From positions 293,522 to 357,521 of the forward strand of contig NW_027192219.1 in NCBI RefSeq assembly GCF_041956535.1: DNA of 64,000 bases, written 5' to 3'. The translations under genes and the position numbers were made by a program. Positions 767-61,499 of the stretch are shown here, piece by piece. The DNA comes from Calcarisporiella thermophila CBS 279.70. Lineage: Eukaryota > Fungi > Calcarisporiellomycota. Below the pieces are notes generated by a model, which was not told the origin of the DNA, made no database searches, and was given only the letters and a program-made list of their open reading frames with translations. The first letter of the stretch is position 1. The number at the start of each line of letters is the position of its first letter.

Positions 767-1686
767 CTACCACTTAGTATATCCTTCTCTTGCCTTAATC
801 ACCGCTTGGATCCGTTCTGGCATCGTGCGAACCATCTTCACACAAACCTCCTGCGTGAGCGACTCCCAGATAATATTATCTCATAGATCACCTGGCTCGT
901 TATCTTCAGGAATCTGCTACTTAGACGTCCCTTATAGCTCAGCCCATAAAATTTCTATGGGGTTGAGATCTGGTGATGATGAAGGCCAGTCGAGAACTTG
1001 GATTTGGTTGTTTTCGAACCACCGACCAATAAGTTTGACCTTGTGCTTAGGGGGTTATTGTCATGCTGAAACACTATCTCTTGCTTGCTGAGACTATACA
1101 ACTGGAGCGTAGCTATCATCTCTTCGTCGAGAATTCTTGAATATAACTCAGCGTTAAGATTTTCTATTATACGACATGCTCTTCCAATGCCATGTGGAGT
1201 CATGCAACCCCACATCATAATACTTCCGCCACCGTGTTTGCTTGTTGGCTGTATATGGCGCTCTTGCAATGGTTCATTACATTTCTTCCAGAACTACTCT
1301 CGCGTTTTATTCCCAAAGATACGTATTTGGCACTCGTCGGAAAAAATGGCACGGTTCCAATCTTTAACGGTCCAATTGCTGTATTTCTTTGCAAATGCCA
1401 TGAGTCTCCTAAGGCGATGCCTTTTCGATAGAAAGAGGTTTTTCTCGACCCTAGCTACAAAATCATTACAATGGAGTGTTTCACGAACAGTGTTCACGGA
1501 AATAACCTCCTCAGTCGTCTCGTTCCAAAGTTCTTGCGCCTTGACTCTGTTCTTACACTCTCGTATCGCCACGCTTCTGCATAACCTATGTTCACCACGG
1601 CTTGATAATTTGCGTGGGTGACCCATTTTCATTCTCGGAGGATTATTAAATGCATTCTCTTTATTCTGGAGTATTCTTGCCAACAT
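767..1686 (-). mobile_element. Degenerate Tc1/mariner (DD34E-type) transposase pseudogene
   Basis: Fragments in several frames on the minus strand: HTH region (GHPRKLS...ISVNTVRETL), 'AIFSDECQI' (first D), 'KHGGGSIMMWGCM', 'VFQHDN' (second D), 'WPSSSPDLNPIEILW' (catalytic E) and a typical C-terminus 'IKAREGYTKW*' ending at 767. It is broken by stops and frameshifts. No TIRs identified. Confidence 0.9.
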
Positions 1687-2319
1687 GGGAACGCCGCATG
1701 AGTAAACATGGTGGAAATAGAACTGAGATGTCTACGAACCTTGGATATATTCAAAAGACTTTATCGATTTCATCCTTCATATAGGCACACTGTTAAACAC
1801 GAGAGAAGTGAATGCTGTCTTTTAAAACTGTTTCTTTACTTGCAATATATTTTATTATCCGTTGATTGTTCTTATCGATCACTTCATATATAATATAATA
1901 TTCTACTGCTTTTTCTCTGATCCAATATGTCTGATCATTTGAAGGTATCCATCGACTCTTTGATCCATTTCGAAGGAAAAATTTGGTCACAGCATCCCAA
2001 GGCCAGGGACTCTTGAAATTGGACAAAATTGCACCCTGTTTTTTTTTCCCAAGTATATCGTCGTGTTTACTCATCTCTTTTAACAGGGTTCCCAAGGATG
2101 TTTCTCACAAAGTTAGGCGCTAAGCTTACGAGGTAAACAGCCGCCACCCCGTATTTGAATATGTGATGAGGCTTGCAGGATAGACGTGCAAGTCTGGTAA
2201 TTTAAATGGACCCCCAATTTTAAAATTGGTATCAAGGAGCATCCTCTTTTACATGGCTTTGATATTCGGATTGAAAAAATGTATATATCTCCAGAATAGA
2301 TGAGTGATATTACATCAAA

Positions 2320-3534
2320 TTATCGTAGTTTTTCGCCTAATCCGGCGACTTTATTGACATCCCGAAGCACCCAAGGATGCGGCTCTTTAGCCTGCGTGAA
2401 TGGCATTTCTTTGCCCCCTCTTAAAGTAAGCGTGTTGACCAAGCGTATATTGGAGACCCGTTCCCGGAAATAGGCGTCCTTCAGTTTGAATTCGCCTTTT
2501 TCTAACCGGAACACCGCGATATCGGCAGGGCCTCCTAGGTGAAGCCGCCCAAGTTCCGGACAGCCGATGGCCTTGCTTGGGCTAAGGGTGGCCCGCGCGA
2601 TCACCTCGTGCAGCGGCACCCCAAGGTGCAAGAACTTGGAGAGCGTGGTGGGGAGGTCGTACAAAGGCCCGAGTGCAGAGAGCTGGTGGAGATCGGAGCT
2701 GATCACATCGGGCAGCTGGCCTTGCTTGACCATAGCTTCGGCGACGGACCAGCTGAAGCTCCCGGACCCATGCCCCAGATCGAGAAGGATGCCGCGGCTT
2801 CGCATCTCCTCCACCACCGGTTTCAGGCGGTAATTCTCGTCGACCAGGCTCTGCGAATGTCCTGTACAGCAGTGGGTCAGGATGTCGCCGGGCGCCATGA
2901 TGCCAACCACGTCCTCAAGCGTGGGCGGGGCCTTTGCAATGTGCACCATCACCGGAAGGCCCACTGCGTCCGCCACCTCTCTTGCCTTTTTCAAGGCCTT
3001 CACGCCTTTATCACTGCCCTGCGATGTATCCGCGTCCACGCGCACTTTGATTCCCTTGATATGGTCGCGGTTGGCCTGAATGGTCGCCACCGCAAGCTCC
3101 ACGTCCACGTTCTCCTCGTGACTCAGCTCGAACGTGCGGCCCGTCAGCCCGATCGCCGAGATATGCAGGAAAGAGAAGACGCGGGTTAGACTCTGGGAAA
3201 TGATGAATCGTTTGAACCCCGGGAAAGTATAGGCGCCAGCGCTCCCCGCGTCCACCACGGTGGTCACGCCGGTGCGGGCACATATGGGGTCCGCCTCGAG
3301 CCCCCAATAGGTGGAGCCCCAGTATACGTGCGTGTGGAGGTCCACTAGCCCCGGGGTTACATACTGCCCCGTTGCGTCCACTATACAGCGGGCATCGCCC
3401 GAGAGATTGGGCCCAATGTCTGCAATTCGGCCATTTGAAATGGCTATGTCGGCGAGGGACTCTGTCTTGGAGAGAGTGTCGATGAGAGTTCCTCCCTTGA
3501 TGAGGACATCGTAATCAGCATTCGATGAAGCCAT
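2320..3534 (-). CDS. Amidohydrolase/deacetylase-family metallohydrolase (COG3964 / EF_0837 / Atu3266-like; often misannotated as dihydroorotase), intronless
   Basis: 404-aa uninterrupted ORF with 'PGLVDLHTHV' (HxH), 'GVTTVVDAGSAG', 'IKGIKVR' (carbamylated Lys position), 'VMVHI', 'GDILTHC', 'DLGHGSGSF' and 'ISSDLH', which is the signature set of this mainly bacterial family. Confidence 0.9.
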   Translation of the reverse strand: MASSNADYDVLIKGGTLIDTLSKTESLADIAISNGRIADIGPNLSGDARCIVDATGQYVTPGLVDLHTHVYWGSTYWGLEADPICARTGVTTVVDAGSAGAYTFPGFKRFIISQSLTRVFSFLHISAIGLTGRTFELSHEENVDVELAVATIQANRDHIKGIKVRVDADTSQGSDKGVKALKKAREVADAVGLPVMVHIAKAPPTLEDVVGIMAPGDILTHCCTGHSQSLVDENYRLKPVVEEMRSRGILLDLGHGSGSFSWSVAEAMVKQGQLPDVISSDLHQLSALGPLYDLPTTLSKFLHLGVPLHEVIARATLSPSKAIGCPELGRLHLGGPADIAVFRLEKGEFKLKDAYFRERVSNIRLVNTLTLRGGKEMPFTQAKEPHPWVLRDVNKVAGLGEKLR

Positions 3535-3848
3535 AAACCTGAGAATTCCACCTGCGCGTGAAAGATAGAGCTCAGGCGCGTGGGCAAGAAAAGCCCCGCA
3601 GGTCTATCAGGGAAAGTGTGGGGGAGCGGGGCTGGACTCCAAAAGGTTTACCCTATTATCTATCTGTTGCTCCCAACCTTAATCTCTTTCTTCGATAGAT
3701 GATCAAGATGACGGGCCAATGGGTGCCGAGTCGGAGCTGCCAATGGAAGGCCAGACCCCACTAAAAATAGGCTTGACTCTTGACATACCCTTTTTTCTCA
3801 AGCGTGTTCCCTTCCAATCTCGCTCTTCTCGCTCTTCTCGCTCTTCTC
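3535..3848. promoter_or_regulatory. Bidirectional promoter with clustered GATA (HGATAR) sites
   Basis: 314 bp between divergent ATGs. AGATAG at 3563, CTATCA at 3604, TTATCT at 3656, CTATCT at 3660 and CGATAG at 3693. A (CTCGCTCTT)x3 pyrimidine repeat lies just upstream of the ATG at 3849. Confidence 0.55.
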
Positions 3849-5303
3849 ATGGCGTCCCTTCCTCCGCAAACCTCCATCCCCGCATTCTTCCCTCCCGACT
3901 TTTACGCGGAGGCCAAGGATCGCCTTCGTAAGCAGTACGTGGGGAAGAGGCTCGTCGACATTCGTTCCCCGGCCCTCGTTGTTAATCGCGCCATTGTCGA
4001 GCGAAATGCACGTCGATTTGAGCAAATTTCGGAGCGCCTTGGGGTGAAAATGCGAGTCCATGTTAAGACGCACAAGGTAGAGATAGGCAATCCTTTCGAT
4101 GCTTACGCTCGGCATTTAATTCCATATTTCAATTGCTCTGACAGACTATTGAAGCCACGGAGATCCAGCTCTCTGAAAAATGTGATTCCATCATTGTCAG
4201 CACTATGGCCGAGGCAGATTTTTTGATCAACTCCCATCTAGTCTCGACTAAAAGGCTCCGGGATGTAAGTTTGCCGAATTCCAGACAAAACAAAAAGGCA
4301 TCCGTTATCAACGGTATTGTTGACAGGTCCTCCTCGGCCTCCCGATCAGCCCCGATAAACTGCAAGAAGCCGCGCTTCTTGCGAAGAAAGTGCCCGTGTT
4401 CAACCTCATGATTGATAATCTGGAGGCATTGGAGGCTGTGGAGAGCTTCTGCGTTCAATGGGGCCAGGACAAGGGGGAGGAGCTGAAGTTCCACGCGTTC
4501 TTGAAAATAGAGTGCGGAAACCAGTACGTCTTTTGCTAGTGTCATCCCCGCTGCTGAATTCATCCAAATGCATTCTCAAATTTAGGCGCGCAGGAGTCCC
4601 TCCAAACTATGCGCCCACGCTTGAACTGGCCCAGAGGCTTCAGGCCAGCCCCCACGTCCATCTGACGGGCATCTATTCCCACGCCGGCCACTCCTATGGA
4701 GGGCGCGACCCCGGATCTACGCAAGACTTTCTTCACCAGGAACGCGACGCGGCTCTTGAATTCAAGCAGTATCTCGAGAAGAACGGGGTGAAGGTTGGAG
4801 AGATATCCATCGGCGCCACCCCGACCGCTATGGCCGCGTCGCTTGAGAGTGTGGAGGGGCTAGGCGGAATCACGGAGCTGCACGCGGGCAATTACATTTT
4901 CTTTGACCGGCAGCAGATTGCCACCGGCCTCGTGGCCCCGGAGGACTGTGCTGCAACAGTCCTGTGTCGGGTGTTGAGTCACTATCCGCTTCGCAGCCAA
5001 ATCCTGGTGGATGCGGGGGCATTGGCCTTCTCGCGCGATGCTGCTCCCCAGGGGGGGTTCGGCACCGTCCTGGGCCACGAAACATGGGAGTTTGCCAAGA
5101 CATCGCAAGAGCATGGGATCATGACCGTGCCGGTGGAGGAGTTCAGCAAGCTACCCATAGGCACTGCGCTGCACGTGATCCCGAACCATGCGTGCTTAAC
5201 CGCCGCGTGTTTCCCCTTCTACATTGTGGTGAGCGATAGCGGGAATTCAGCCTTGGACCAATTGGTGGTGGAGGATGTGTGGGTCCCTTGCAAATTTTGG
5301 TAG
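3849..5303 (+). CDS. DSD1: DSD1-like D-serine dehydratase / D-threonine-aldolase family (fold-type III PLP enzyme)
   Basis: Exons 3849-4076, 4145-4264, 4327-4523 and 4586-5303, joined by GT-AG introns in one frame. Motifs: 'SPALVVN', PLP lysine 'RVHVKTHKT', 'VSTMAEA', 'KIECGNQRAGV', 'YSHAGHSY', 'SIGATPT', 'ELHAGNY', 'DAG', 'SQEHG' and the Zn-ligand motif 'PNHACLTAA'. Confidence 0.9.
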
Positions 5304-5633
5304 AGCGGCTGGGCCCATCCCAATGGACAGGAAAGGGATTCAACTAATATTTAATACCTTGTCATTTTTTATCATGTTGTATCTGTACGCTATAAAGTGA
5401 GTAACTCCTCCCCCCAAGGATAAAGCAATAGCCGCTGCCTAATTCTATCTATGGAAAACTCTCCTCTCTTGCCCACGAGGACTTTCTGGATCCCATTCTA
5501 CGAATCACCTGGATGACTAAGAAAATGGTGGAATTCTCGAGACCACGTGCACAGGGTGGGAAAATAGCACGTATTTAAATCGAACCCGCAGATTACTAAG
5601 TCGCGGTTGGAATCGCGTCAACTTAGTAGCACG

Positions 5634-6118
5634 ATGGCTAACATCAACAAAAAATTCATTAACACTGAGCAGACAGTCCTAAGCAGCGCCAATCGCGCAG
5701 CTCCATTGTCACAAGCTGTGGTCATTAATGACCTGGTGTTTTGCTCGGGAATTATCCCCCAAACCCCTGAAGGTAAGTGGCAAGCCCCCTCTCTTTCGAC
5801 CACCCCCCCCCCCCATGGACTGCTTAACATTCTCGGCACTAATGTGGGTCATATATAGGGGATCTTGTCGAAGGTGACATTCAGGTTAAGACCCGCCAAA
5901 TCATAAGCAATTTAAAGGATGTTCTCAGTGCTGCAGGAACATCACTTGAGAAGCTTGTGAAGGTGAATGTATACCTCAAGGATATGGGAAACTTCAGCTC
6001 TATGAATGAAGCGTATAATGAGCTGCTGCCAGAGCCGAAACCTGCGCGAACATGCGTTCAAGTGGCCAATCTGCCGAGGAATGTGGATATTGAAATAGAA
6101 TGCGTGGCCCACCTATGA
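5634..6118 (+). CDS. RidA/YjgF/UK114 (Mmf1/Hmf1-like) enamine/imine deaminase
   Basis: Exons 5634-5772 and 5859-6118. Translation includes 'PLSQAVV', 'CSG', 'LVKVNVYLKDMGNFSSMNEAY', the catalytic Arg in 'KPARTCVQV' and 'IEIECVA'. The second exon is absent from the ORF track. Confidence 0.93.
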
Positions 6119-9100
6119 ATTAGATCCAGTGGAGACACTCTTTTCTAAATTCCATTTTCTCTATCCAATAAACATATACTTGAAGAGGTACACCCGCGAC
6201 CTCCTATGCCCTTTTACATTGGCCTCAAGTGGAGCTGGCTAAAGACTCCCTTTTCCCGGGGACAGGCAGTTGGTTATTATTGGAGAAGGCAGCAATACAA
6301 TGAGATCTGTCAGCCCAGGGAAGCTTCATGCCACTGGTTGTGGCCTATTCTGAAAAGGCTTATGTGATGGACAATGGTTCTCTTTTTAAGAAAAAGATAG
6401 ATAGGAAAAGCCCGCGTTTATTGGCAACGCTAAAGACACTGCACCTATTAGTTTCGATAACGAGCTTCTCCTTATTAGCGCCTATTGAATACTCTAGGCA
6501 AGACATTGGTTATGAGAGGCCTGACCAAATGAATGGTAAAGAATTTTGTAGAAGAAAGGAAGGAGCGCTGAATAAATTAAGTGCTGGGTAACCAGGGTTG
6601 AAGCACAGCCGGTATCGCGATATATGAGATGATAAAGAGGTCTGCTAGTACAAATTTTCTATTTGCTATGGAATAGATAGGAGACTCAATTCAAGGACTG
6701 AAGATAAAATAAAATATAGAAAATCCTTGCACAAAATAGCGCGTTGCTGACATGTAATATATTGCCTCTTTGGTTTCTCAGGCTAACCAGCTGCTCTTCA
6801 ACCGCATGGCATCCTGGTTGATTCGAGACTCTTTGACACTACCCGGGCTTTAATGAGAATTTCATCCTGACGCGCACATGGTGCTGAAAACTGGGTCGTC
6901 GATCCGATTCTAAGTTTCCTTCATAAAGAACCATTTCTTTGACCCTCTTGGAGAGTATGAAAAACACGCGTCTGCTGTGCTTAGAGCTTGCTCACTGGAT
7001 TCCATCGATTTCGAAAAGGCAGTCACGTTCATTCTCCGTTTCAAAGGTTTGTTTACATGTTGAAATTCGGGTATAAAAGTGACCAGATTTTTCACTTATT
7101 CTCCTTACTCTCTTCCTCTTCTCTACTTTTTCCTATCTCTTCTTCCTCCATCTCTTTCTATCAACCCCATTATGTATTATTAACTACCCATCCGCGCTAA
7201 TACTGAATTGAGTATGAGGTAAATAGGCCTGTTCGAATTTTCTATTTTTTTTTGGGGGGGTGGTTTATGATGAGATTTCAAGAGGACAACGTCTTCTTTC
7301 CCCGTCCTCGCCTTAACTTATCGACCATGGTGAAACAAACCACCGGCGCCCGATTTGTTTGGGTTGTCGGTTGTACTTGCCAGTATTTTTTTCTACTGAT
7401 TCATCACCCTTTCAGCTCCCACTGCATTCATGTTGCGAATTCAAGGATGATTACTAATGTTTTATCCTTCATTAGATTGTACATTTCTGCCCTCATCTCG
7501 TCAGTACTATAGTATTAGTATACTATTAGGTAATTATCCACTTATGCGCAGGGGGGTTTTGGAAAGGGGATTTAGGGGATGATGTTTATTCCTAATTCGC
7601 AGTTTCCACCAAAAGAGCTTGACGCTCTTGTGATGGTTAAAGCACCTTCCTTGGATGTCTGATAAATCCTTTATCCTAAAACCCTCTGGTTTTCGCCATG
7701 GTTGAATCCGTTGACTAATGATTTTACGGTTTTAGGTTTTACGATGTCCTGTTTACATCGAGGTTAACGAACTAAATATCAATAAAAAATAATTTAGTCT
7801 AAATCGTTCTTTCGAATTACCAAGAGTAAATGTTATTTGACCCCAATGAACTATCTCCTGCCAATGCTACAGTTAAAAAATTGGGTTCAAACATGAATAA
7901 TTTTGTGATATCCTCAGAAGCTAGTGATGGCATGGTGTTTATTAATGGATTCGCTCGGATGCGATTTCTACATTCTTGTTTCATGGTTGAAATGTATGGT
8001 TTAAAGGGCGCATCCCTTGATTTATGAATAATTTTGTATTTTATTCAATTATCTTTGCCAAACTTTTAAGCTGTACTATGAGGCGGCAGGGTCAAAAACA
8101 AAACAAGCACCACCACCCTGTACAATTCAGAAAATAAACCAAGATCAGCATGAATAAACTATTTAAGCCATAGACAGTCGATATAGAGTTAATAAAACAA
8201 AGAGTCTTTGGTAATTGGCCAAAGCTTCGCGGGTGAGCATACTACTCTGGTATTGCTTGGTATAACACATAAGATCATCCAAGTTCGGAAAACTTAACTA
8301 ATTTTCATCCTTTAAGGGCTGTTGCGATGAATCAGGGCTTTTTTTACTTCCTGATCATCTTTGGTGATTCTGCTAGAGTGGGTTTAGGTTTTAAGGGTAG
8401 TTCATAGAGAGAAATATTCTTTCCAGCACCTTCGAAGCCCATTTCCTCAGGATCAGATGCATGCCTATCCTTTGCACGACCTTGCTTATGCAAACCTGTT
8501 CTCGAAAAGGAACACTCTGTTACTTCACCCCTCCTTGCTTGCATCGAAACGGACGGGAAAATCCGCCTACCTTTATTGGGCTTGGGTTTTGGAAGATTTG
8601 CCATAACCATAGGCATATTCATCGGGGATATGCCAATACCCATCCACGGATACACTTGGACGGGCATCCACATGGGTGGGGGCTGAATTTGAATAGCAGG
8701 TTGACTAGGTTCTGGCGCGGGTGCTGTAGTTGCGGCCACGGGTGGTGCTGAAGCGGGGAGTGAAGGCGCAGGAGGATTGGGAACAGCAGGAAGGGGGAGG
8801 AATGTCTGTTAGTTTCCGGTGGAGGCGCCAAAGCTAACACTTTTAACTACTGGACCAGATACAGGCCGCCCAATAGAGCTAGCTGATATAGGGAGGGGTT
8901 GGCAACCTTTGCCAAAGGGCTGCCACCGTGGGGTCATAATAATAGTGCTAGATTTACGCAGTTTCATCATGATAACGCAGGACAATAGGCCGAGTTTAAG
9001 CTCCTCCGTGAACATCCACGTGCAATGAAATAGATCCGAGATGGACGCATCCACAGCATGTGCACAGCGCTTGGTTATGAGCGTGCAGGACGCGACGTCT

Positions 9101-50696: not shown

Positions 50697-53600
50697 ATGA
50701 TGGAGAGTTTTTACATGTATTTTCAGGACAAGCGCCATGAGACAATGGCTAGGCCAGCATCTCAGATCGTATCCCAACAAGAATGGCGCATGAAGGAAAG
50801 GCTAAAAACCGTTTCGGTGCTAATATTGATCTGCCTCAATATTGGTGTCGATCCGCCGGACATCGTAAAGACTCATCCGTGCGCGAAATTAGAATGCTGG
50901 TTTGATCCTGAATCAACAGCGCGTGGAAAGGCAATGGAAGAGATTGCAAAGCGATTACAAAGCCAGTATGAGGCATTACAACCCCGAGCGCGGTATAGAT
51001 TAGGCTTAGATCCATCCGTGGAGGACGCGCGCAAACTTTGTCAGCAGCTGCGCAGAAATGCCAAGGATGAGCGCGTACTTTTCCACTACAATGGACATGG
51101 AGTTCCAAAGCCAACCACAAGTGGAGAGATTTGGTTATTCAACAAGAACTTTACACAATATATCCCAGTATCCCTCTATGATATCCAAGGGTGGTTGGGT
51201 GCGCCATGCATCTATGTTTACGACTGCTCAGCTGCGGGTAATATCCTATTGTCATTTAATAAGTTTGCAGAGCAACGCGATCAAGAAGCTCAGCGTGCTG
51301 CCGCAAGGAATGCTTATTCTTCTTCCACTTCATCCCAACAACCACCGCAGCTCCAACAGCAGCAACAACCTCAACTTCACCCTCAACAACAGCAGCAGCC
51401 ACAGCAGCAGCAACCTCAACCTTACCATCCCCACCACCGACAAAACCAACCACAGCAAAATGGTGGAAATATACCCCATGCACCTTTTCCGAGTATGAAC
51501 GATAGCATTCAATTGGCAGCCTGCGGGCCAAATGAGATCTTGCCTATGCATCCCGATATGCCTGCTGATATGTTTACATGCTGTTTAACCACCCCCATCG
51601 AGATTGCCGTCACCTATTTTGTGCTCCAAAATCCACTCAAACTCACCAATCTCTCCTTGGCAAAGGTGCGCAAGATTCCCGGGCGAACAGATGACCGACG
51701 GACTCCGCTGGGCGAGTTGAACTGGATTTTTACGGCCATCACCGATACGATTGCTTGGAATGTGCTGCGTGACGAACCCGAGTTATTCAAGCGTCTGTTT
51801 CGACAGGATCTGATGGTGGCCGGCTTATTCCGCAATTTCCTACTGGCAAATCGAATTATGCGAACCTACAAATGCACCCCGATGTCGTCGCCCGTCCTAC
51901 CTCCAACCCACAACCACCCGCTGTGGGATGCGTGGGATCTGGCGGTCGATATGGTGTTGGCTCAAATGCCGGCTCTACTAGAGGCGGAAGCTAATGCAAT
52001 CCAGCCTCTGCCCTACAAAAATAGCAACTTCTTCGAGGATCAGCTGACCGCATTCGACGTGTGGCTCCGGAAAGGGGCAGTAACCCGCCAGCCTCCCGAA
52101 CAGTTGCCCATTGTACTCCAGGTGTTGCTCAGTCAGGTGCATCGTGTTCGGGCCCTTGTGCTGCTGAGCAAATTTTTAGACTTGGGACCCTGGGCAGTGC
52201 ACCTTGCGCTCTCCGTGGGCATCTTCCCTTATGTGCTCAAGCTTCTACAGAGTCCAGCGGCGGATCTCAAACCCGTGTTGGTGTTCATCTGGTCGCGCGT
52301 TCTGGCGGTCGACCGCTCATGCCAGATGGACCTGCACAAGGGCAATGGCTTCCTCTACTTTGTGAACATTCTTTCACCCAAGCATAACCTCCCGCTCCCA
52401 AATGTTGCGGACCACCAGGCCATGTGCGCATTCATTCTCTCCGTGTTTTGCACGGATTTCCCTCCCGGGCAGCAAGCATGCCTAAAAAATAATGTGATGG
52501 GTTTCTGTGTCGAACACATTGGCCATCACGACCCGTTGCTCAAACAGTGGGCATGCCTGCTGCTTGGACAGCTGTGGAGGCACCACCCAGAGGCGAAGTG
52601 GACCGCGATCCGTGATAATACTCACGTGCGCCTGCTTGAATGTCTGGCCACCCCAGAGAATGTTCCTGAGGTTCGCGCCTCAATCCTGTATGCATTGACC
52701 ACCTTCATTGGTGATCTAGATAAAACTGAGCAGGTTGTGGATATAGAACGCATGATCGCGGTGACTGCGCTGGTAGCGACCAACGACCAGTCACCCGTGG
52801 TGAGGCGCGAACTTGTGATCCTACTTTCGGCCATTGTACACGAATATCTGCCCAAATTTATTCTTGCAGCTTACGAGCTCACTGAAGAAGACAGACAGAG
52901 AGCTGAAGATCAACGGAGTAAACAACAGCAGCATCCGCAGCAACAAGGGCAGCCGCCACAGCAACAAAGACGCGAGCGCCGCCGTATCTCTGATGGAGTA
53001 TTCCGTTCCCAAGGCCACCACAGCACAATCTATGGGAGCATTTGGAAAGCACTCCTGACCCTCTCGGTGGATCCACACCCTGAAGTACGCGAGTCGGCAA
53101 CCAAGATCGTGGACTACGTTCACTACCAGCTCATTTGTCAACCACCCTCGGAGAGCATTGTATCTTCCCTCTATCAGTTGGTCAATTCAGCGCCATCCTC
53201 AACGCCTACTCTGGCCAATACACCCTCCACGACTTCGGTGGCGTCTGCCGTGGGAGGAGGGGGCTCGGTCGGAGGAGCAGGAGCAGTAGGTGGAGGAAGA
53301 CCCGCTCTTCCACCGAATGAGCGATCTCTGTCGTTCCATGGCACTGCAGGTGGAAGTGGGGCGGATCCAGTGACAACTGCCGCTTCACGCGTGGCTTCAA
53401 CTCTAAGGCGTTCAGCCTCGTTTGTTTTCAAAAACTTGTACTCCCACTCAAACGGGGATACATCCTCTATGGACGAGCACCATCATCCCGAACGGGCGCA
53501 CACGCCGCCTCCTGTAAGCTTAAAGAGGGTAGGCACTGCGCCCTCCTCAGGGAGGATATCTCCCGTGCCCACTCCCCTAGAGGGAAGTCGAGGAGGATCC

Positions 53601-55053
53601 TCCACGGTGTCGACGGATGGCGGGGAAAACTGGGAATCTTTGAGGCTACCCCTGAAATCGGAATTTTTCGAGTGGAGCTGCGAGTTCTTTACCGAGCCCC
53701 AAATCCAAGTATTTATTCTCATTCATACTATAACATTTTGTATCTGGGTTATTTATATTTTGTTCGCTTTTACCCTTTTTGCTTTCTCTAAGCCTTCTGA
53801 GTCCGACGAGCCCGGAAGCATCACCTATAACGAGCGGTTGTGGCGACGCAACCGGAATGAAAAGATTATTGCGCAGACACAAACCATAAAAGAGAGTGCA
53901 GGTTGGTTGAGTTACTGTTACTAGGATTCGTCTCTGGAAACAAAAGACACTAACGCTATATTCTGTTCTATTATTCAATAGGAGCGAGTGCATGGGATCG
54001 AACTCTTCGGACGATGGGTGTGGACATCATTCCATCCAAGATGACATTCCATCAATTCGAACCCCATTTGATATTTGCAGATAATCAGCACACTCTGAGG
54101 TAGGTGAATTGGTACAGGGAGGAAACTAAGGGGCAAATACCCAAGGCTTAACCTTCCACTTCTTATCCTTCAGTGTATACAACTGGGAGGACGGAACCCA
54201 CCTCAACTATTTCGCCAATGGCAATCCTCCTCGTAGCCATATATCATCGATTCGTCTGATCAACGAAGAGGACATTGCCATGCTTATGGCTGGCTCGAGT
54301 GATGGCGTTGTACGCATGTACAAACATTATGACCGCATGGGACAGGCAGAGCTCGTTACCGCTTGGAGAGCACTTCCTGAGATGACTCCAGCTTCGCCCG
54401 GAGTCGGACTGGTGATGGAATGGCAGCAGCGTGGCGTGCTCTTTGTGGCTGGAGACGCCAAGGCGATAAAAATATGGGATGCTGCCAGGGAGTTGTGTAT
54501 AAGTGATGTCCACACACGCAGTGGGAGCTTTGTTACCTCGCTTAGCAGCGATCAGATGGGCGGGAACATTTTTGTGGCTGGGTTTGCGGATGGGGCCATT
54601 CGCGTCTACGATCGGAGAATGGATCCCCGGGAGTGCATGGTGTGGCAATGGAAGGAGCACAAGAGCCCGGTGATAAACGTTTCGATGCAGCAAGATGGAA
54701 ATCGTGAGCTTGTGAGCGGTGGGGCTGCAGGCGACGTTCGCGTGTGGGATGTTCGGATGGAATCCTCGGTCCACACCTGGGAAGCACACATGTCGTCTCT
54801 CTCTGCAATCGCAGCCCATCCAAGTGCCCCCGTTATTTCGACGGGCTCACAGCACCTCGTCAAGGTCTGGAACACCTCTGGCACACAATTAAGCATCCTA
54901 CGACAACACACCGGCTTTTTGGGACAGCGAATAGGGCCTGTTACAGCTCTGGCTTTCCACCCCCACAAGGCCGTTTTGGCGGCGGCAGGAGGTGGTGACC
55001 ATTATGTAACCATACAGTGCCCTCATATTAGCGAGGACGGGAAGAGAGCGTAG
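50697..55053 (+). CDS. KOG1: TORC1 subunit Raptor (Kog1/Mip1)
   Basis: RNC domain 'WRMKERLKTVS...CLNIGVDPPD', 'RVLFHYNGHGVP', 'LFRQDLMVAGLFRNFLLA' and 'PPEQLPIVLQVLLSQ', then HEAT repeats and a C-terminal WD40 region. Introns at about 53710-53791, 53902-53981 and 54100-54173. An additional 5' exon is possible. Confidence 0.96.
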
Positions 55054-58305: not shown

Positions 58306-61300
58306 ATGCAAGAGTTTAAGTTGCATGGAGTTATCTTTCATTATAATGAAGGTCAAGGCGATGAATTCGAGCCACAAGCTCTCGCGCTACAGCGAAAATC
58401 GCAGAACAATGTATTGATGAGAAAGGGAGAATCTGCTTATGGTATTGTAGAGAATATTCCTCGGTTTCTTGAACAGGTGCAGTGTACGGAGAAGTTGGAA
58501 GATCGAGATTATTATGTTCTTGCCACAGAGCAAGACAATAAGCTCGGATGGATGGTGGTTGAGTTGCACGTGGTGAATAATCTCTATAGAGGGTCAGTTT
58601 TCAGGCGCGATCAATATCCAGAAAATGTAGTCATAAGGTAAATTTCGAGCTTAGACATAAAAATGACTAAGCAAATTCTTAATTCTTGTTTTTAGATATT
58701 TGATGGGGATATACCAGAGAGCAATGCAAAGTGTTTTCGGGGTAGAATGTGATAATGCATCTGGTTTTGCAGTATCTAGTGCGCATTAACAAGTGGATGA
58801 ATCTACCGTGAAGCTTTTATTCCACACTGTGTCGCGCCTGAAAAACAAGAGTAACCAATTATTAGTATTTGAGAATATACAACAGGAGAAAGCCTTCATC
58901 GAAAAGGTAAACCAGCTGACAGTAATAGAGTGAGGCGTTTCGATGGTTAAATGGGCTATATTTGTAGCTCCATGAATACATTGAATACGATGATCGAAAT
59001 CTCAACGAGTGTGCTAATATTTTATATGGAGGAAACCAACCTGAAAAAAACATGTAAAATGGAAATAGCGCGTTTCGTTTACTTGGAAGCATCCGCAGCG
59101 GACACGCAGAATCATTGCTTATGGTCGAGAAGGAACTCGGCGGTCGCTTTTGTAGTCCGTTAGATCACTTTCCTTTAGTTACCCAGTCAATCTATACAGA
59201 AACAGCGGTTGAAGTGCTAAAGCTATTTCCTGTTCTTACGGTAAGAACGGAACCAACTATAGCGGTGGTACACAAGAATTGGGAGCATGTCATTAATTCA
59301 TTTGCACCTAATGTTACTAATGGGATATATCCGGTCACGTCCTCACTGGTTTCTGGGTCACGGCTACCGCCCTTGAAATGTGTTCCCTTACCTGATGATG
59401 GGGAGCTTATTGGCAAAATTCGATCCAAATATCCTCACTGCCCTAGAATATATGATGTTGTGCAATTCGCAGAAGTGAAGGGACTGAAGTTGCAATGCTA
59501 TACACCTTGGAATGAACAAGTTCCGGATACATGGGTGTTTCGTTTTTATCCTAGTACTAGTAGACTGGAGACTACCGAGTGTATGCACGTGAGTCAGGGG
59601 AGTCAGATTATCTGGACCTGTGTGCCGATGGACAGCTATGCGAATACAAGCAATATGCGCGTCCGTCTGTCGGATACGGTGCCCATACATTCAGGATTCG
59701 GGAAACTAGTATTTCGTTGCCTGGATCCAATATGCCCTAAAGAAACATATATAGATGAATATGGAGCGAGTTGGCCTTATAACATGTTGCCTTACCTCAC
59801 CCCACCCGACATGTTATATCGCGTTGTTCATCATGAGGGCCTTGCTGGTGCCGCTAAGTGGCTTGTTTCGAGGTTATGCGGTCCTGATAGCCGTCAACCC
59901 AAGCTCGCATATCTTCCTCTGTTGGACAAATGGGTAGCATGGGATGGAGTGGTTTGGAGAAGATATACTGAAATTCCTGCAGAGCTTTCGATGGGGTGCT
60001 CACGATATGTCGAACGTATACGTGCTCAACTTCCTGTTCGAGCAGAAGAGGATGCGGTCACAACCGGATTGATTCGAATCATGGATTTTACTCTCATGCG
60101 ATTTTAACACTATTTAAATATCCACAAGAACCTGGAAAAGAATGTGGACAAAATGCTCTATGAACTTCCGGGCGAAATATTCGACACAGCCTCCTCCTTA
60201 CTTGTCATCAATAATAGATACCTTGATCTTAAGCAAGGTCGTTTCGTTGAAACGCGACCTAATCATTATATAACTCACAGTGTGCCTACCTACTATGACT
60301 CCGAGGTAGATCTCTGTCATGACACAGGTTCGCTACCTCTTGTAGATGAATTCATGAATTCCTTATTCGAAGATCGTGAAGCCGACGAACGGGTTTCGAC
60401 AATCTCCTCGCTTCAAACTTTCCTTGGATATTCATTGACTGGAGAGGCTAGTGAACACCTTTCTCTCATCCTGTATGGCGAGGGGAGAAATGGTAAGGGC
60501 GTTTTAACCCGCGCTATTCGTGCGGTATTCGATATAGCAGATGAGCGACCGATACAGGACGCCTCAAGCACTCAAATTCTGAAGCGTTCGGAATTACGCC
60601 AGATGCTAGCATACCCAACTCATGATGAGTTACTTACCCAGACATGCCCAATAAAAAGGAGATACTCTGTCGCGACTTCCCAGCATTTCCTCTATACCAT
60701 TGTCGATAATAAACTCATAGCTAAGACGGCAAAAACTAGCAAAAATGCACACACAACACAACCTGTGAGCTTAGTTGGAGCTCGTGTTGTATTAGTGAAT
60801 GAATTGGATGTGAATGCACAGCTTGACGAGGCGAAGCTCGAACGATTGTCGAATGGAGATCCACTTTGCATTCGGAAAATTTATGGAAGGACAACATTTA
60901 CTATCTCTAGCCCAACTCACACTCTTCTAATTGACACCAGTACCATACCTAATAGACTAATTGGGCGATCATTGAGTTCGCATACTCGGGTTCTCAGATT
61001 TAACCTATACTTCAATGCGAACAAAAAGCCGGGCGATCCGCTCAATACCAATGAGCGAGTAGCGGACACTTGGATGGAAACTAAAATTTTGGATGTATCG
61101 TTTCGACGTCAACTCTTGCGATGGCTTTTACGCGGTGCCCATCGATATTATCAACAAGGGCGTTTACGCTGGGCCAAATCCATTGAGCAGGACACGCGTG
61201 CATTTTGGGGCGAAGATGACTATTTCGATCGATTTCTGATTGAAAAATGCGAAATGGCCAAGAAATTGCTTCCGTTAGAGGAAGCCATCCAACGCAAACT

Positions 61301-61499
61301 ATACACACCAGCGTTTAGCCTCTATGACAGGTTTCGTAACTATGTGCGAGAGCAAGGCAATGTCGATAGTGCCAATATACTGAGTAAGAAGGCCTTTATT
61401 TGCCGTCTAGGGAGCCAGCCATATATATTTAAGAAACGCACAGCCCAAGGGGAATTGAGTCGTCAATGGCATTACTTTGGTTTGCATGTCTTAGAATGA
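58306..61499 (+). pseudogene. Virus/mobile-element-derived AEP (PrimPol-like) primase, Zn-finger and D5-like SF3 helicase gene; intron-containing, with three premature stops
   Basis: Exons 58306-58637, 58696-58906 and 58968-61499 form one frame. TAA codons at 58787, 59055 and 60105. Walker A 'LYGEGRNGKG', Walker B 'GARVVLVNE', 'GDPLCIRKIY', D5_N-like 'WVAWDGVVWR...NNRYLDLKQG', Zn-finger-like 'FRCLDPIC' and AEP-like 'AFRLLGS'. Confidence 0.8.

What the first reader, a model, noticed from the sequence alone, without database searches (positions are those of the whole stretch)
2320..6118. Candidate fungal gene cluster for catabolism of an N-acyl-D-amino acid (deacetylase + DSD1-type dehydratase + RidA)
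Seen in the sequence: three metabolically linked genes packed into 3.8 kb, the first two divergent across a 314-bp spacer, flanked by a dead Tc1 on one side and degraded DNA on the other. Established knowledge: COG3964 amidohydrolases are deacetylases/esterases rather than true dihydroorotases (from memory, characterised members act on (R)-configured acetylated substrates and weakly on N-acetyl-D-Ser/Thr). DSD1-type fold-III PLP enzymes beta-eliminate D-serine or related beta-hydroxy-D-amino acids to give a reactive enamine, and RidA hydrolyses such enamines to a keto acid plus ammonia. Inference: the cluster encodes a complete route N-acetyl-D-X -> D-X -> enamine -> 2-keto acid + NH3. X could be serine/threonine, or D-glucosaminate, which would be a route for oxidised chitin monomer leading to KDG. 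Similar gene neighbourhoods exist in bacteria, but I know of no described fungal cluster of this composition.
Basis: partly seen in the sequence, partly recalled or inferred. Interest (0 to 1): 0.88.

Follow-up and report, generated by a model that had tools for sequence, protein, structure and literature searches.

The report
Conserved fungal deacetylase–D-serine dehydratase–RidA cluster
Three intact neighbouring genes in the thermophilic fungus Calcarisporiella thermophila (a bacterial-type deacetylase, a D-serine-dehydratase-type enzyme and a RidA deaminase) stay together in at least four other early-diverging fungal genera and probably form a small pathway that turns an N-acetylated D-amino acid into a keto acid, acetate and ammonia.

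Summary
The window is from Calcarisporiella thermophila. It carries an intronless 404-aa COG3964/PRK09237 amidohydrolase (2320-3534, minus strand). A 314-bp spacer separates it from a divergent 4-exon, 420-aa DSD1-type PLP/Zn dehydratase (3849-5303), which is followed by a 2-exon, 132-aa RidA (5634-6118). All catalytic residues are present.

The same trio is adjacent in Umbelopsis, Gongronella, Absidia and Bifiguratus, in three different arrangements and with different flanking genes.

The parts have different histories:
- The amidohydrolase nests among bacterial (Chloroflexota-like) sequences. The fungal copies form one clade, which suggests an old horizontal transfer.
- The dehydratase belongs to the eukaryotic D-serine dehydratase family. 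Cluster-linked copies form their own sub-lineage with a K[IV]ECGN signature. Solitary Mucoromycota copies, which have no amidohydrolase or RidA beside them, read KVDCGY.

Bacteria rarely link these families (one full trio in 80 loci), and they use a different dehydratase clade, so the fungal cluster was assembled independently. The closest characterised analogue is the bacterial ongC/B/D module for oxidised chitin, which uses a different deacetylase family.

The substrate is not established. N-acetyl-D-serine/threonine is the likeliest candidate and N-acetyl-D-glucosaminate is possible. No expression data were available. I rate it a new variant of a known kind, of moderate-to-good interest.

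The parts
2320..3534 (-). Gene A: intronless 404-aa COG3964/PRK09237 amidohydrolase/deacetylase-family metallohydrolase (P0001)
   Evidence: ORF. NCBIfam NF006689 equivalog scores 432 bits against a cut-off of 371. Pfam gives Amidohydro_1 and Amidohydro_3. The best PDB match is 2ogj (Atu3266), E 3.7e-64. The binuclear-metal ligands H67, H69, K163, H198, H221 and D281 are invariant in a 25-sequence alignment. It is single-copy in the genome.
3535..3848 (.). 314-bp divergent A/D promoter spacer
   Evidence: It lies between the A start codon (3534, minus strand) and the D ATG (3849). It holds five GATA cores, all in the HGATAR context. Against mononucleotide shuffles P is about 0.002 for HGATAR and 0.09 for the GATA core, and 12% of 314-bp tiles of the window have at least five cores. 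This is suggestive only.
3849..5303 (+). Gene D: DSD1-type (eukaryotic D-serine dehydratase family) fold-type III PLP/Zn enzyme, 420 aa; exons 3849-4076, 4145-4264, 4327-4523, 4586-5303
   Evidence: The exon translations equal residues 1-76, 77-116, 117-181 and 183-420 of database product P0361, and the split codon CAG gives Q182. Pfam gives Ala_racemase_N and D-ser_dehydrat. It aligns end to end with chicken D-serine dehydratase 3anu, E 5.7e-63, with the HVKTHK motif (PLP Lys K76) and the HAC motif (H383, C385) conserved. It is the only gene of this family in the genome.
5304..5633 (.). 330-bp D-R spacer (tandem orientation)
   Evidence: It holds four GATA cores.
5634..6118 (+). Gene R: RidA-subfamily enamine/imine deaminase, 132 aa; exons 5634-5772 and 5859-6118
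   Evidence: TIGR00004 scores 102 bits on exon 2 alone and 19 bits on exon 1, against a whole-protein cut-off of 106. Pfam Ribonuc_L-PSP scores 8.9e-17. PDB matches include PH0854, yeast Hmf1 and Mmf1, and E. coli YjgF and TdcF, with the Arg of the PAR motif conserved. About four other Rid paralogues lie elsewhere in the genome.

Best explanation
The three genes form a conserved catabolic or salvage module of Mucoromycota-grade fungi. The proposed mechanism has three steps. (1) The amidohydrolase, of bacterial origin and with a binuclear metal centre, removes the acetyl group from an N-acetylated, D-configured beta-hydroxy-alpha-amino acid. (2) The DSD1-type PLP/Zn enzyme eliminates the beta-hydroxyl of the freed D-amino acid and releases an enamine or imine. 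(3) RidA hydrolyses that reactive intermediate to a 2-oxo acid plus ammonia. The likeliest substrate is N-acetyl-D-serine (giving pyruvate, acetate and NH3) or N-acetyl-D-threonine. What is shown: gene integrity, family membership, catalytic residues, conserved linkage, congruent trees for A and cluster-type D, and separate origins of the parts. What is inferred: the order of reactions, the substrate and co-regulation.
For: All three genes are intact, with complete catalytic residue sets. The trio is adjacent in Umbelopsis ramanniana (A+ D- R+), Gongronella butleri (A+ D- R+), Absidia cylindrospora (A+ D- R+) and Bifiguratus adelaidae (D- R+ A+). The window has A- D+ R+. That makes three arrangements with unrelated flanking genes, and always at least one head-to-head pair. 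In Umbelopsis sp. WA50703, A and D carry consecutive locus tags. Where D stands without A (Mucor plumbeus, Dichotomocladium, Endogone), there is no R beside it either. Cluster-linked D shares an E178 signature (K[IV]ECGN) in all five genera, whereas the three solitary D genes read KVDCGY. Cluster-linked D copies also group together: Absidia and Gongronella join Umbelopsis with 99/96 support, not the other Mucorales. This mirrors the A tree. D family members with known activity are D-serine or beta-hydroxy-D-amino-acid dehydratases (PDB titles). The bacterial ongB/ongC/ongD genes encode a deacetylase, a fold-III PLP deaminase that also acts on D-Ser and D-Thr, and a RidA that is essential in vivo. 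They are an experimentally proven pathway of the same logic (PMC9537276). Bacteria independently link A with D in 6 of 80 loci, A with R in 4 of 80, and all three in an operon in L012. From memory of Ornelas et al. 2013, which I could not read, characterised COG3964 enzymes have weak N-acetyl-D-Ser/Thr deacetylase activity.
Against: No activity, metabolite or expression evidence exists, and no RNA run was listed. From memory, the best known substrates of COG3964 enzymes are O-acetyl esters such as acetyl-(R)-mandelate, while N-acetyl-D-Ser/Thr turnover is poor. Most bacterial A genes have varied neighbours and no D or R, so the family is not tied to this pathway. Basidiobolus has A without D or R beside it. 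The cluster-specific E178 change hints that cluster D may not be a plain D-serine dehydratase. No transporter or regulator is conserved beside the trio.
Confidence: 0.55

Rival explanations
1. The pathway logic is the same, but the substrate is N-acetyl-D-glucosaminate (GlcNAc1A), the C1-oxidised chitin monomer made by LPMOs or chito-oligosaccharide oxidases. A would give D-glucosaminate, and D with R would give 2-keto-3-deoxygluconate plus NH3. This would be a fungal counterpart of the bacterial ong pathway.
For: ongB/ongC/ongD have the same three-function composition, and OngC is a broad fold-III enzyme that also takes D-Ser and D-Thr. Cluster-type D is a distinct sub-lineage with an E178 signature, which would fit a changed specificity. 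These fungi have chitin- and chitosan-rich walls (general knowledge).
Against: A is not of the OngB/D-aminoacylase family. D-aminoacylases match only its N-terminal ~90 residues, with E about 1e-8. No KDPG aldolase (PF01081) was found in the genome, although the controls responded. No sugar-acid kinase, aldolase, transporter, GH20 or LPMO is linked in any of the five fungal loci. D sits in the eukaryotic D-serine dehydratase family, and its relationship to the OngC clade could not be tested.
Confidence: 0.17
2. Only D and R work together, in D-serine detoxification or catabolism. A acts on an unrelated ester or amide, as Atu3266 does on acetyl-(R)-mandelate, and is merely a conserved neighbour.
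For: From memory, COG3964 enzymes prefer esters. Bacterial A genes mostly lack D and R neighbours. Basidiobolus carries A alone.
Against: Adjacency survives three rearrangements and different flanks in five genera. R is beside D only where A is also present. The A and cluster-D trees are congruent. Independent A-D and A-R pairings recur in bacteria. In Kwoniella a non-homologous D-aminoacylase-type amidohydrolase sits beside DSD1, so a deacylase-dehydratase pairing has arisen at least twice.
Confidence: 0.13
3. The substrate is another N-acyl or otherwise masked beta-substituted D-amino acid, such as a D-threo-3-hydroxyaspartate derivative. Alternatively, A itself releases an enamine from an N-acyl-dehydroamino acid, which RidA then quenches.
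For: D is also related to D-threo-3-hydroxyaspartate dehydratase (E 4e-46). Some bacteria have R-A pairs with no D within 8 kb (L054, L059, L062).
Against: There is no specific evidence for it, and it does not explain why D is always present in the fungal cluster.
Confidence: 0.12
4. The genes are decaying passengers in a transposon-rich, AT-rich region and no longer function.
For: The cluster is flanked by a Tc1-like remnant and by AT-rich DNA without recognisable genes. No RNA evidence was available.
Against: All reading frames are intact, the introns are canonical, every catalytic residue is conserved, and both A and D are the only copies in the genome.
Confidence: 0.03

Closest known systems
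ongCRBD module of the oxidative chitin utilisation (ong) cluster, Pseudoalteromonas prydzensis (PMC9537276; PMC12017989)
   Same: It has the same three functions side by side: an amidohydrolase-superfamily de-N-acetylase, a fold-type III PLP deaminase/dehydratase that also accepts D-Ser and D-Thr, and a RidA protein needed in vivo. [quoted passage not shown]
   Different: OngB is a D-aminoacylase-like enzyme of about 480 aa (amidohydrolase subtype V). A is a COG3964 enzyme of 404 aa. OngC is reported as its own clade, while D belongs to the eukaryotic D-serine dehydratase family. The bacterial cluster also has a regulator, transporters, a GH20 and a KDG kinase, none of which is linked in the fungi. 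The window is eukaryotic, its genes have introns, and the cluster was assembled independently.
COG3964 amidohydrolases Atu3266 (PDB 2ogj) and EF_0837 (PDB 2ics), described by Ornelas et al. 2013 (paper not readable here)
   Same: A passes the NCBIfam equivalog model for this family. Its best solved relative is 2ogj (E 3.7e-64), and it has the full set of binuclear metal ligands.
   Different: A belongs to a fungal clade that is sister to a Chloroflexota/Thermomicrobiota clade and is about 45% identical or less to the alphaproteobacterial members. The physiological substrates of the family are unknown.
Eukaryotic zinc-dependent D-serine dehydratase (yeast Dsd1p, chicken DSD 3anu)
   Same: The domain pair, the PLP lysine motif and the His/Cys zinc ligands are the same, and D aligns with it end to end. 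D falls in a fungal clade next to Dikarya proteins that UniRef names D-serine dehydratase.
   Different: Cluster-linked D forms a sub-lineage with Glu instead of the otherwise conserved Asp in the K-x-D-C-G motif, and it is embedded in a three-gene cluster. From memory, yeast DSD1 is not clustered with a RidA or an amidohydrolase.
Bacterial D-R-x-A operon in a Thermomicrobiales MAG (L012) and A-D pairs in Actinomycetes MAGs (L061, L063, L065)
   Same: The same three families are linked, and A is 45-52% identical to the window's A.
   Different: The bacterial D genes belong to a separate bacterial clade, about 30% identical to the fungal D. The fungal trio is therefore not a transferred copy of such an operon.
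Fungal catabolic gene clusters (e.g. DAL, GAL, nitrate and quinate clusters; general knowledge)
   Same: It is a small cluster of co-oriented or divergently transcribed catabolic genes, kept together across genera and lost as a unit.
   Different: It occurs in early-diverging fungi, includes a horizontally acquired bacterial gene, and targets a D-amino-acid-type substrate.

Membership tests
COG3964 / NCBIfam NF006689 (PRK09237) amidohydrolase/deacetylase family metallohydrolase | Whole-protein score above the curated equivalog cut-off | tested here: met
   432.4 bits against a cut-off of 371, covering residues 7-378.
COG3964 / NCBIfam NF006689 (PRK09237) amidohydrolase/deacetylase family metallohydrolase | Binuclear metal centre ligands (HxH, bridging Lys, two His, Asp) | tested here: met
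   H67, H69, K163, H198, H221 and D281 are invariant in 25 fungal and bacterial sequences.
COG3964 / NCBIfam NF006689 (PRK09237) amidohydrolase/deacetylase family metallohydrolase | Deacetylase or esterase activity on (R)/D-configured acetylated substrates | not testable with these tools
   This needs an enzyme assay. The key paper (PMC3542638) is not held.
Eukaryotic DSD1-type D-serine dehydratase (fold-type III PLP, Zn-dependent) | Ala_racemase_N plus D-ser_dehydrat domain pair | tested here: met
   PF01168 scores 2.3e-19 and PF14031 scores 2.7e-23 on P0361.
Eukaryotic DSD1-type D-serine dehydratase (fold-type III PLP, Zn-dependent) | PLP-binding lysine and His/Cys metal ligands | tested here: met
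   HVKTHK (K76) and NHAC (H383, C385) align with the same motifs of chicken DSD 3anu.
Eukaryotic DSD1-type D-serine dehydratase (fold-type III PLP, Zn-dependent) | Phylogenetic placement with eukaryotic, not bacterial, members | tested here: met
   The Mucoromycota clade (99) is sister to Dikarya DSD1 (99), and the named bacteria lie across a branch with support 95. The exon-4-only tree is less resolved at depth.
Eukaryotic DSD1-type D-serine dehydratase (fold-type III PLP, Zn-dependent) | All residues that are conserved across the family | tested here: inconclusive
   Of 51 columns conserved in at least 88% of sequences, 49 are kept. T40S and D178E differ, and D178E is shared by all cluster-linked copies.
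RidA subfamily (TIGR00004) | HMM score above the cut-off, and the conserved active-site Arg | tested here: met
   Searched exon by exon: 102 and 19 bits against a cut-off of 106.25. The PAR motif Arg aligns with solved RidA proteins. A joined model was not searched.
ong-type GlcNAc1A catabolic cluster | OngB-type (D-aminoacylase-like) GlcNAc1A deacetylase | tested here: not met
   A matches D-aminoacylases only over residues 7-98, with E about 1e-8. OngB structures 9KB1 and 9KB3 are not among its significant full-length hits.
ong-type GlcNAc1A catabolic cluster | OngC-clade deaminase | not tested
   No OngC sequence could be obtained. The class-level genome search landed in a Chloroflexia-like class.
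ong-type GlcNAc1A catabolic cluster | Downstream KDG kinase / KDPG aldolase | tested here: not met
   None is linked in the fungal loci. PF01081 was not found in the genome, although the controls responded.
Conserved fungal metabolic gene cluster | Linkage kept across genera despite rearrangement and different flanks | tested here: met
   Five genera, three arrangements.
Conserved fungal metabolic gene cluster | Co-expression | not testable with these tools
   No RNA run was listed.

The most novel reading that the evidence does not exclude
The trio is the missing eukaryotic route for C1-oxidised amino sugars (N-acetyl-D-glucosaminate and D-glucosaminate from LPMO or oxidase action on chitin and chitosan). 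It would have been built convergently with the bacterial ong pathway from a horizontally acquired Chloroflexota-type deacetylase and a neofunctionalised D-serine dehydratase lineage marked by E178.
Probability: 0.17. Interest if true: 0.8.

Novelty: new variant of a known kind. Interest (0 to 1): 0.6.

Why it matters
D-amino-acid and oxidised-amino-sugar catabolism is well worked out in bacteria and barely at all in fungi. This is a compact three-gene module that can be tested directly. It is conserved across Calcarisporiellales, Umbelopsidales, Bifiguratus and the Mucorales genera Gongronella and Absidia (A homologues are also present in Hesseltinella and Halteromyces). One part came from bacteria, and another is a specialised branch of a native enzyme. 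It would add an example of a metabolic gene cluster in early-diverging fungi. It would show a pathway architecture assembled convergently in bacteria and fungi from non-orthologous parts. It would also suggest a physiological context for the poorly understood COG3964 amidohydrolases and for a pathway-dedicated RidA. The enzymes come from a thermophile, so they could also be useful for D-amino-acid biocatalysis.

Tried and rejected
- RNA evidence: the look-up of sequencing runs listed no run, so expression and splicing could not be checked by reads.
- The COG3964 paper (PMC3542638) is not held. Its content is cited from memory only.
- Searches for the PDB codes 8JE0, 8WZY, 2OGJ and 2ICS gave nothing useful. 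A literature search for a fungal D-serine dehydratase/RidA cluster found nothing relevant.
- OngC comparison: I tried to centre a class-level search on L062, which is labelled 'Klebsiella'. Its genome falls in the same class as a Thermomicrobiales MAG, so 401 Chloroflexia-like genomes were searched instead. This showed that D-like genes are common there (246 of 401) but at most 38% identical to the window's D. No OngC sequence was obtained.
- A tally of the immediate neighbours of 80 bacterial A genes was varied and pointed to no substrate: SDR 5, aldo-keto reductase 4, PhyH 4, class-V aminotransferase 4. Longest-ORF calling in GC-rich DNA undercounts real genes.
- A RidA tree on 85 residues was unresolved.
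- Pfam found nothing in the right-flank ORFs and only a sub-threshold Tc3 HTH hit on the left.
- PF01081 was not found in the genome.
D was analysed through the database's own product P0361, and R was analysed exon by exon. A joined R model was left out.
- No structure or complex prediction was run, because no claim here depends on one.


Full report
**What is there.** The window is from Calcarisporiella thermophila. A Raptor/Kog1 ORF at 50697-53924 is 100% identical to a protein NCBI names from that species, and the taxonomy is Calcarisporiellomycota. A GC-rich island at 2.3-6.1 kb lies between AT-rich flanks and holds three genes.
- A (2320-3534, minus strand) is an uninterrupted 404-codon ORF.
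- D has four exons: 3849-4076, 4145-4264, 4327-4523 and 4586-5303. All introns are GT..AG, of 62-68 nt. Each exon translation is found, in order and without gaps, in a 420-aa database protein (P0361) returned by the representative search. The split codon CAG supplies Q182.
- R has two exons (5634-5772 and 5859-6118) and an 86-nt intron. It was searched exon by exon, and a joined R model was left out.
- The A-D spacer is exactly 314 bp.

**Family assignments.**
- A passes the curated NCBIfam equivalog for 'amidohydrolase/deacetylase family metallohydrolase' (PRK09237: 432 bits, cut-off 371). Its best solved relative is Atu3266 (2ogj, COG3964), followed by 8wzy, 8je0 and EF_0837 (2ics). True dihydroorotases, allantoinases and D-aminoacylases match only the N-terminal ~90 residues. 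The six metal-centre residues are invariant.
- D carries Ala_racemase_N plus D-ser_dehydrat. It aligns end to end with chicken zinc-dependent D-serine dehydratase (E 5.7e-63) and with D-threo-3-hydroxyaspartate dehydratase (E 4e-46). The PLP lysine motif (K76) and the His/Cys metal ligands (H383, C385) are conserved.
- R is a RidA-subfamily protein with the active-site Arg.
- In the 28-Mb genome A and D are single-copy. R has about four paralogues elsewhere, so the cluster copy is an extra one.

**Linkage in other fungi.** Linkage is there.
- The trio is adjacent in Umbelopsis ramanniana, Gongronella butleri and Absidia cylindrospora (all A+ D- R+) and in Bifiguratus adelaidae (D- R+ A+). The window has A- D+ R+ (checked by tblastn).
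- Flanking genes differ between lineages, and every arrangement keeps at least one head-to-head pair.
- A and D of Umbelopsis sp. WA50703 bear consecutive locus tags.
- D stands alone, with neither A nor R nearby, in Mucor plumbeus, Dichotomocladium elegans and Endogone, where the contig is short.
- Basidiobolus has A without D or R beside it.

**Origins of the parts.**
- A: the eleven fungal sequences form one clade (SH-aLRT 99-100). With more distant bacterial homologues included, this clade is sister (98) to a Chloroflexota/Thermomicrobiota-dominated clade and nested among bacteria. The nearest Atlas clusters are 100% bacterial. Identity to Chloroflexota (54-56%) equals identity to the other fungi.
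- A has no intron in Calcarisporiella, Bifiguratus and Basidiobolus, but gene lengths imply introns in Umbelopsis, Gongronella and Absidia. Its GC content matches that of the host genes. This points to one old transfer from bacteria. The root is a midpoint root only, so the direction is likely but not proven.
- D lies in a Mucoromycota clade (99) that is sister (99) to Dikarya proteins named D-serine dehydratase, within a eukaryotic group. All named bacterial sequences lie across a supported branch (names). Chloroflexia-like genomes often have D-like genes, but these are at most 38% identical.
- R could not be placed on 85 residues.

**A distinct cluster-type D.** A tree of the large last exon was built with seven cluster-linked and three solitary Mucoromycota D genes.
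- The Mucorales genera that carry the cluster (Absidia, Gongronella) group with Umbelopsis (99/96) and then with Bifiguratus. They do not group with the solitary Mucorales genes.
- All cluster-linked copies fall on one side of a branch, with weak support (63/91). This order mirrors the A tree.
- A sequence signature agrees. All five cluster-linked genera read K[IV]ECGN, and the three solitary genes read KVDCGY. The Asp is kept in at least 88% of 25 other eukaryotic members.
- The window's D keeps 49 of 51 family-conserved positions.
- Either an old duplication produced a cluster type and a solitary type that were then lost differentially, or the cluster moved between fungal lineages. Either way, A and cluster-type D have travelled together.

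**Bacterial context.** Among 80 bacterial A loci, D lies within 8 kb in six and R is directly adjacent in four. All three occur together once, in a Thermomicrobiales MAG, where D and R overlap by 4 bp and A follows after about 1.2 kb. These bacterial D genes form their own clade far from the fungal D. The fungal trio is therefore not a transferred operon but an independent assembly of the same three functions. Other bacterial A neighbours are varied.

**Known precedent.** In Pseudoalteromonas prydzensis the ongCRBD operon encodes three relevant proteins (PMC9537276):
- OngB, which deacetylates N-acetyl-D-glucosaminate.
- OngC, a fold-III PLP deaminase that forms KDG plus NH3 and also takes D-Ser and D-Thr.
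- OngD, a RidA that is essential in vivo.

[quoted passage not shown] OngB is a D-aminoacylase-type enzyme (PMC12017989), a different amidohydrolase branch from A. A second fungal case of such pairing turned up by chance. In Kwoniella dendrophila the DSD1 orthologue lies directly downstream of a 553-aa amidohydrolase whose exons best match PpOngB and D-aminoacylases.

**Mechanism and substrate.**
- The best-supported reading is deacetylation, then beta-elimination, then enamine hydrolysis.
- D's family favours D-serine or D-threonine, so N-acetyl-D-Ser/Thr is the leading candidate.
- N-acetyl-D-glucosaminate stays possible. In its favour are the ong analogy and the specialised D lineage. Against it, no KDG-handling gene is linked and no KDPG aldolase was found in the genome.
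- The A-D spacer has five HGATAR sites, a weak hint of nitrogen control.
- Nothing here shows activity or expression.

**Verdict.** The searchable literature showed no description of this fungal cluster. It is a new variant of a known kind of system.

Noticed in passing
L136:3102-7867 (Kwoniella dendrophila CP144102.1): The DSD1 orthologue (6001-7867) lies directly downstream, on the same strand, of a 553-aa Amidohydro_3 gene. That gene's exons best match PpOngB (9KB1) and D-aminoacylases. This is a second, non-homologous deacylase plus DSD1 pairing in a basidiomycete. No RidA lies within 6 kb.
   Followed up: partly
window 4500-4523 (D residues 176-181) and the equivalent sites in L001, L002, L008, L009, L134, L135, L137: Cluster-linked D genes read K[IV]ECGN and solitary Mucoromycota D genes read KVDCGY. 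In all eight fungal genes examined, the translation after this motif runs straight into stop codons, which suggests a shared intron position. The structural role of the Asp/Glu residue is unknown to me.
   Followed up: partly
P0124 (labelled Bradysia odoriphaga, an insect): This protein nests inside the Umbelopsis D clade with a short branch. Fungal contamination of the insect assembly is more likely than an insect gene.
   Followed up: no
L062 (MAG labelled 'uncultured Klebsiella sp.'): Its A gene is nearly identical to one from a Singulisphaera MAG, and its genome falls in the same class as a Thermomicrobiales MAG in the genome collection. The label looks wrong.
   Followed up: no
L054, L059, L062: In these bacteria a RidA gene lies immediately upstream of the COG3964 gene and no DSD-type gene lies within 8 kb. 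This hints that some family members may feed RidA directly.
   Followed up: no
L012:1802-5898 (Thermomicrobiales MAG): This is an operon-like D (1802-3016), R (3013-3480, 4-bp overlap), an unidentified ~1.2-kb stretch, then A (4663-5898). Pfam finds nothing in the gap.
   Followed up: partly
window 955-1686 (-): A broken Tc1/mariner-like transposase: a Tc3-type HTH hit at 28.5 bits in one ORF and a GGGS..WGC-type catalytic-domain remnant in the next frame.
   Followed up: partly
window 60144-61499 (+): A 451-aa ORF has a weak D5_N (primase-helicase N-terminal) hit, E 1.1e-6. It may be a relic of a virus or mobile element.
   Followed up: no
L135:5160-6870 (Endogone sp.): The annotated 125-aa gene upstream of the 289-aa 'serine dehydratase domain' protein is in fact the N-terminal part of the same D gene, so the gene model is split.
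   Followed up: partly
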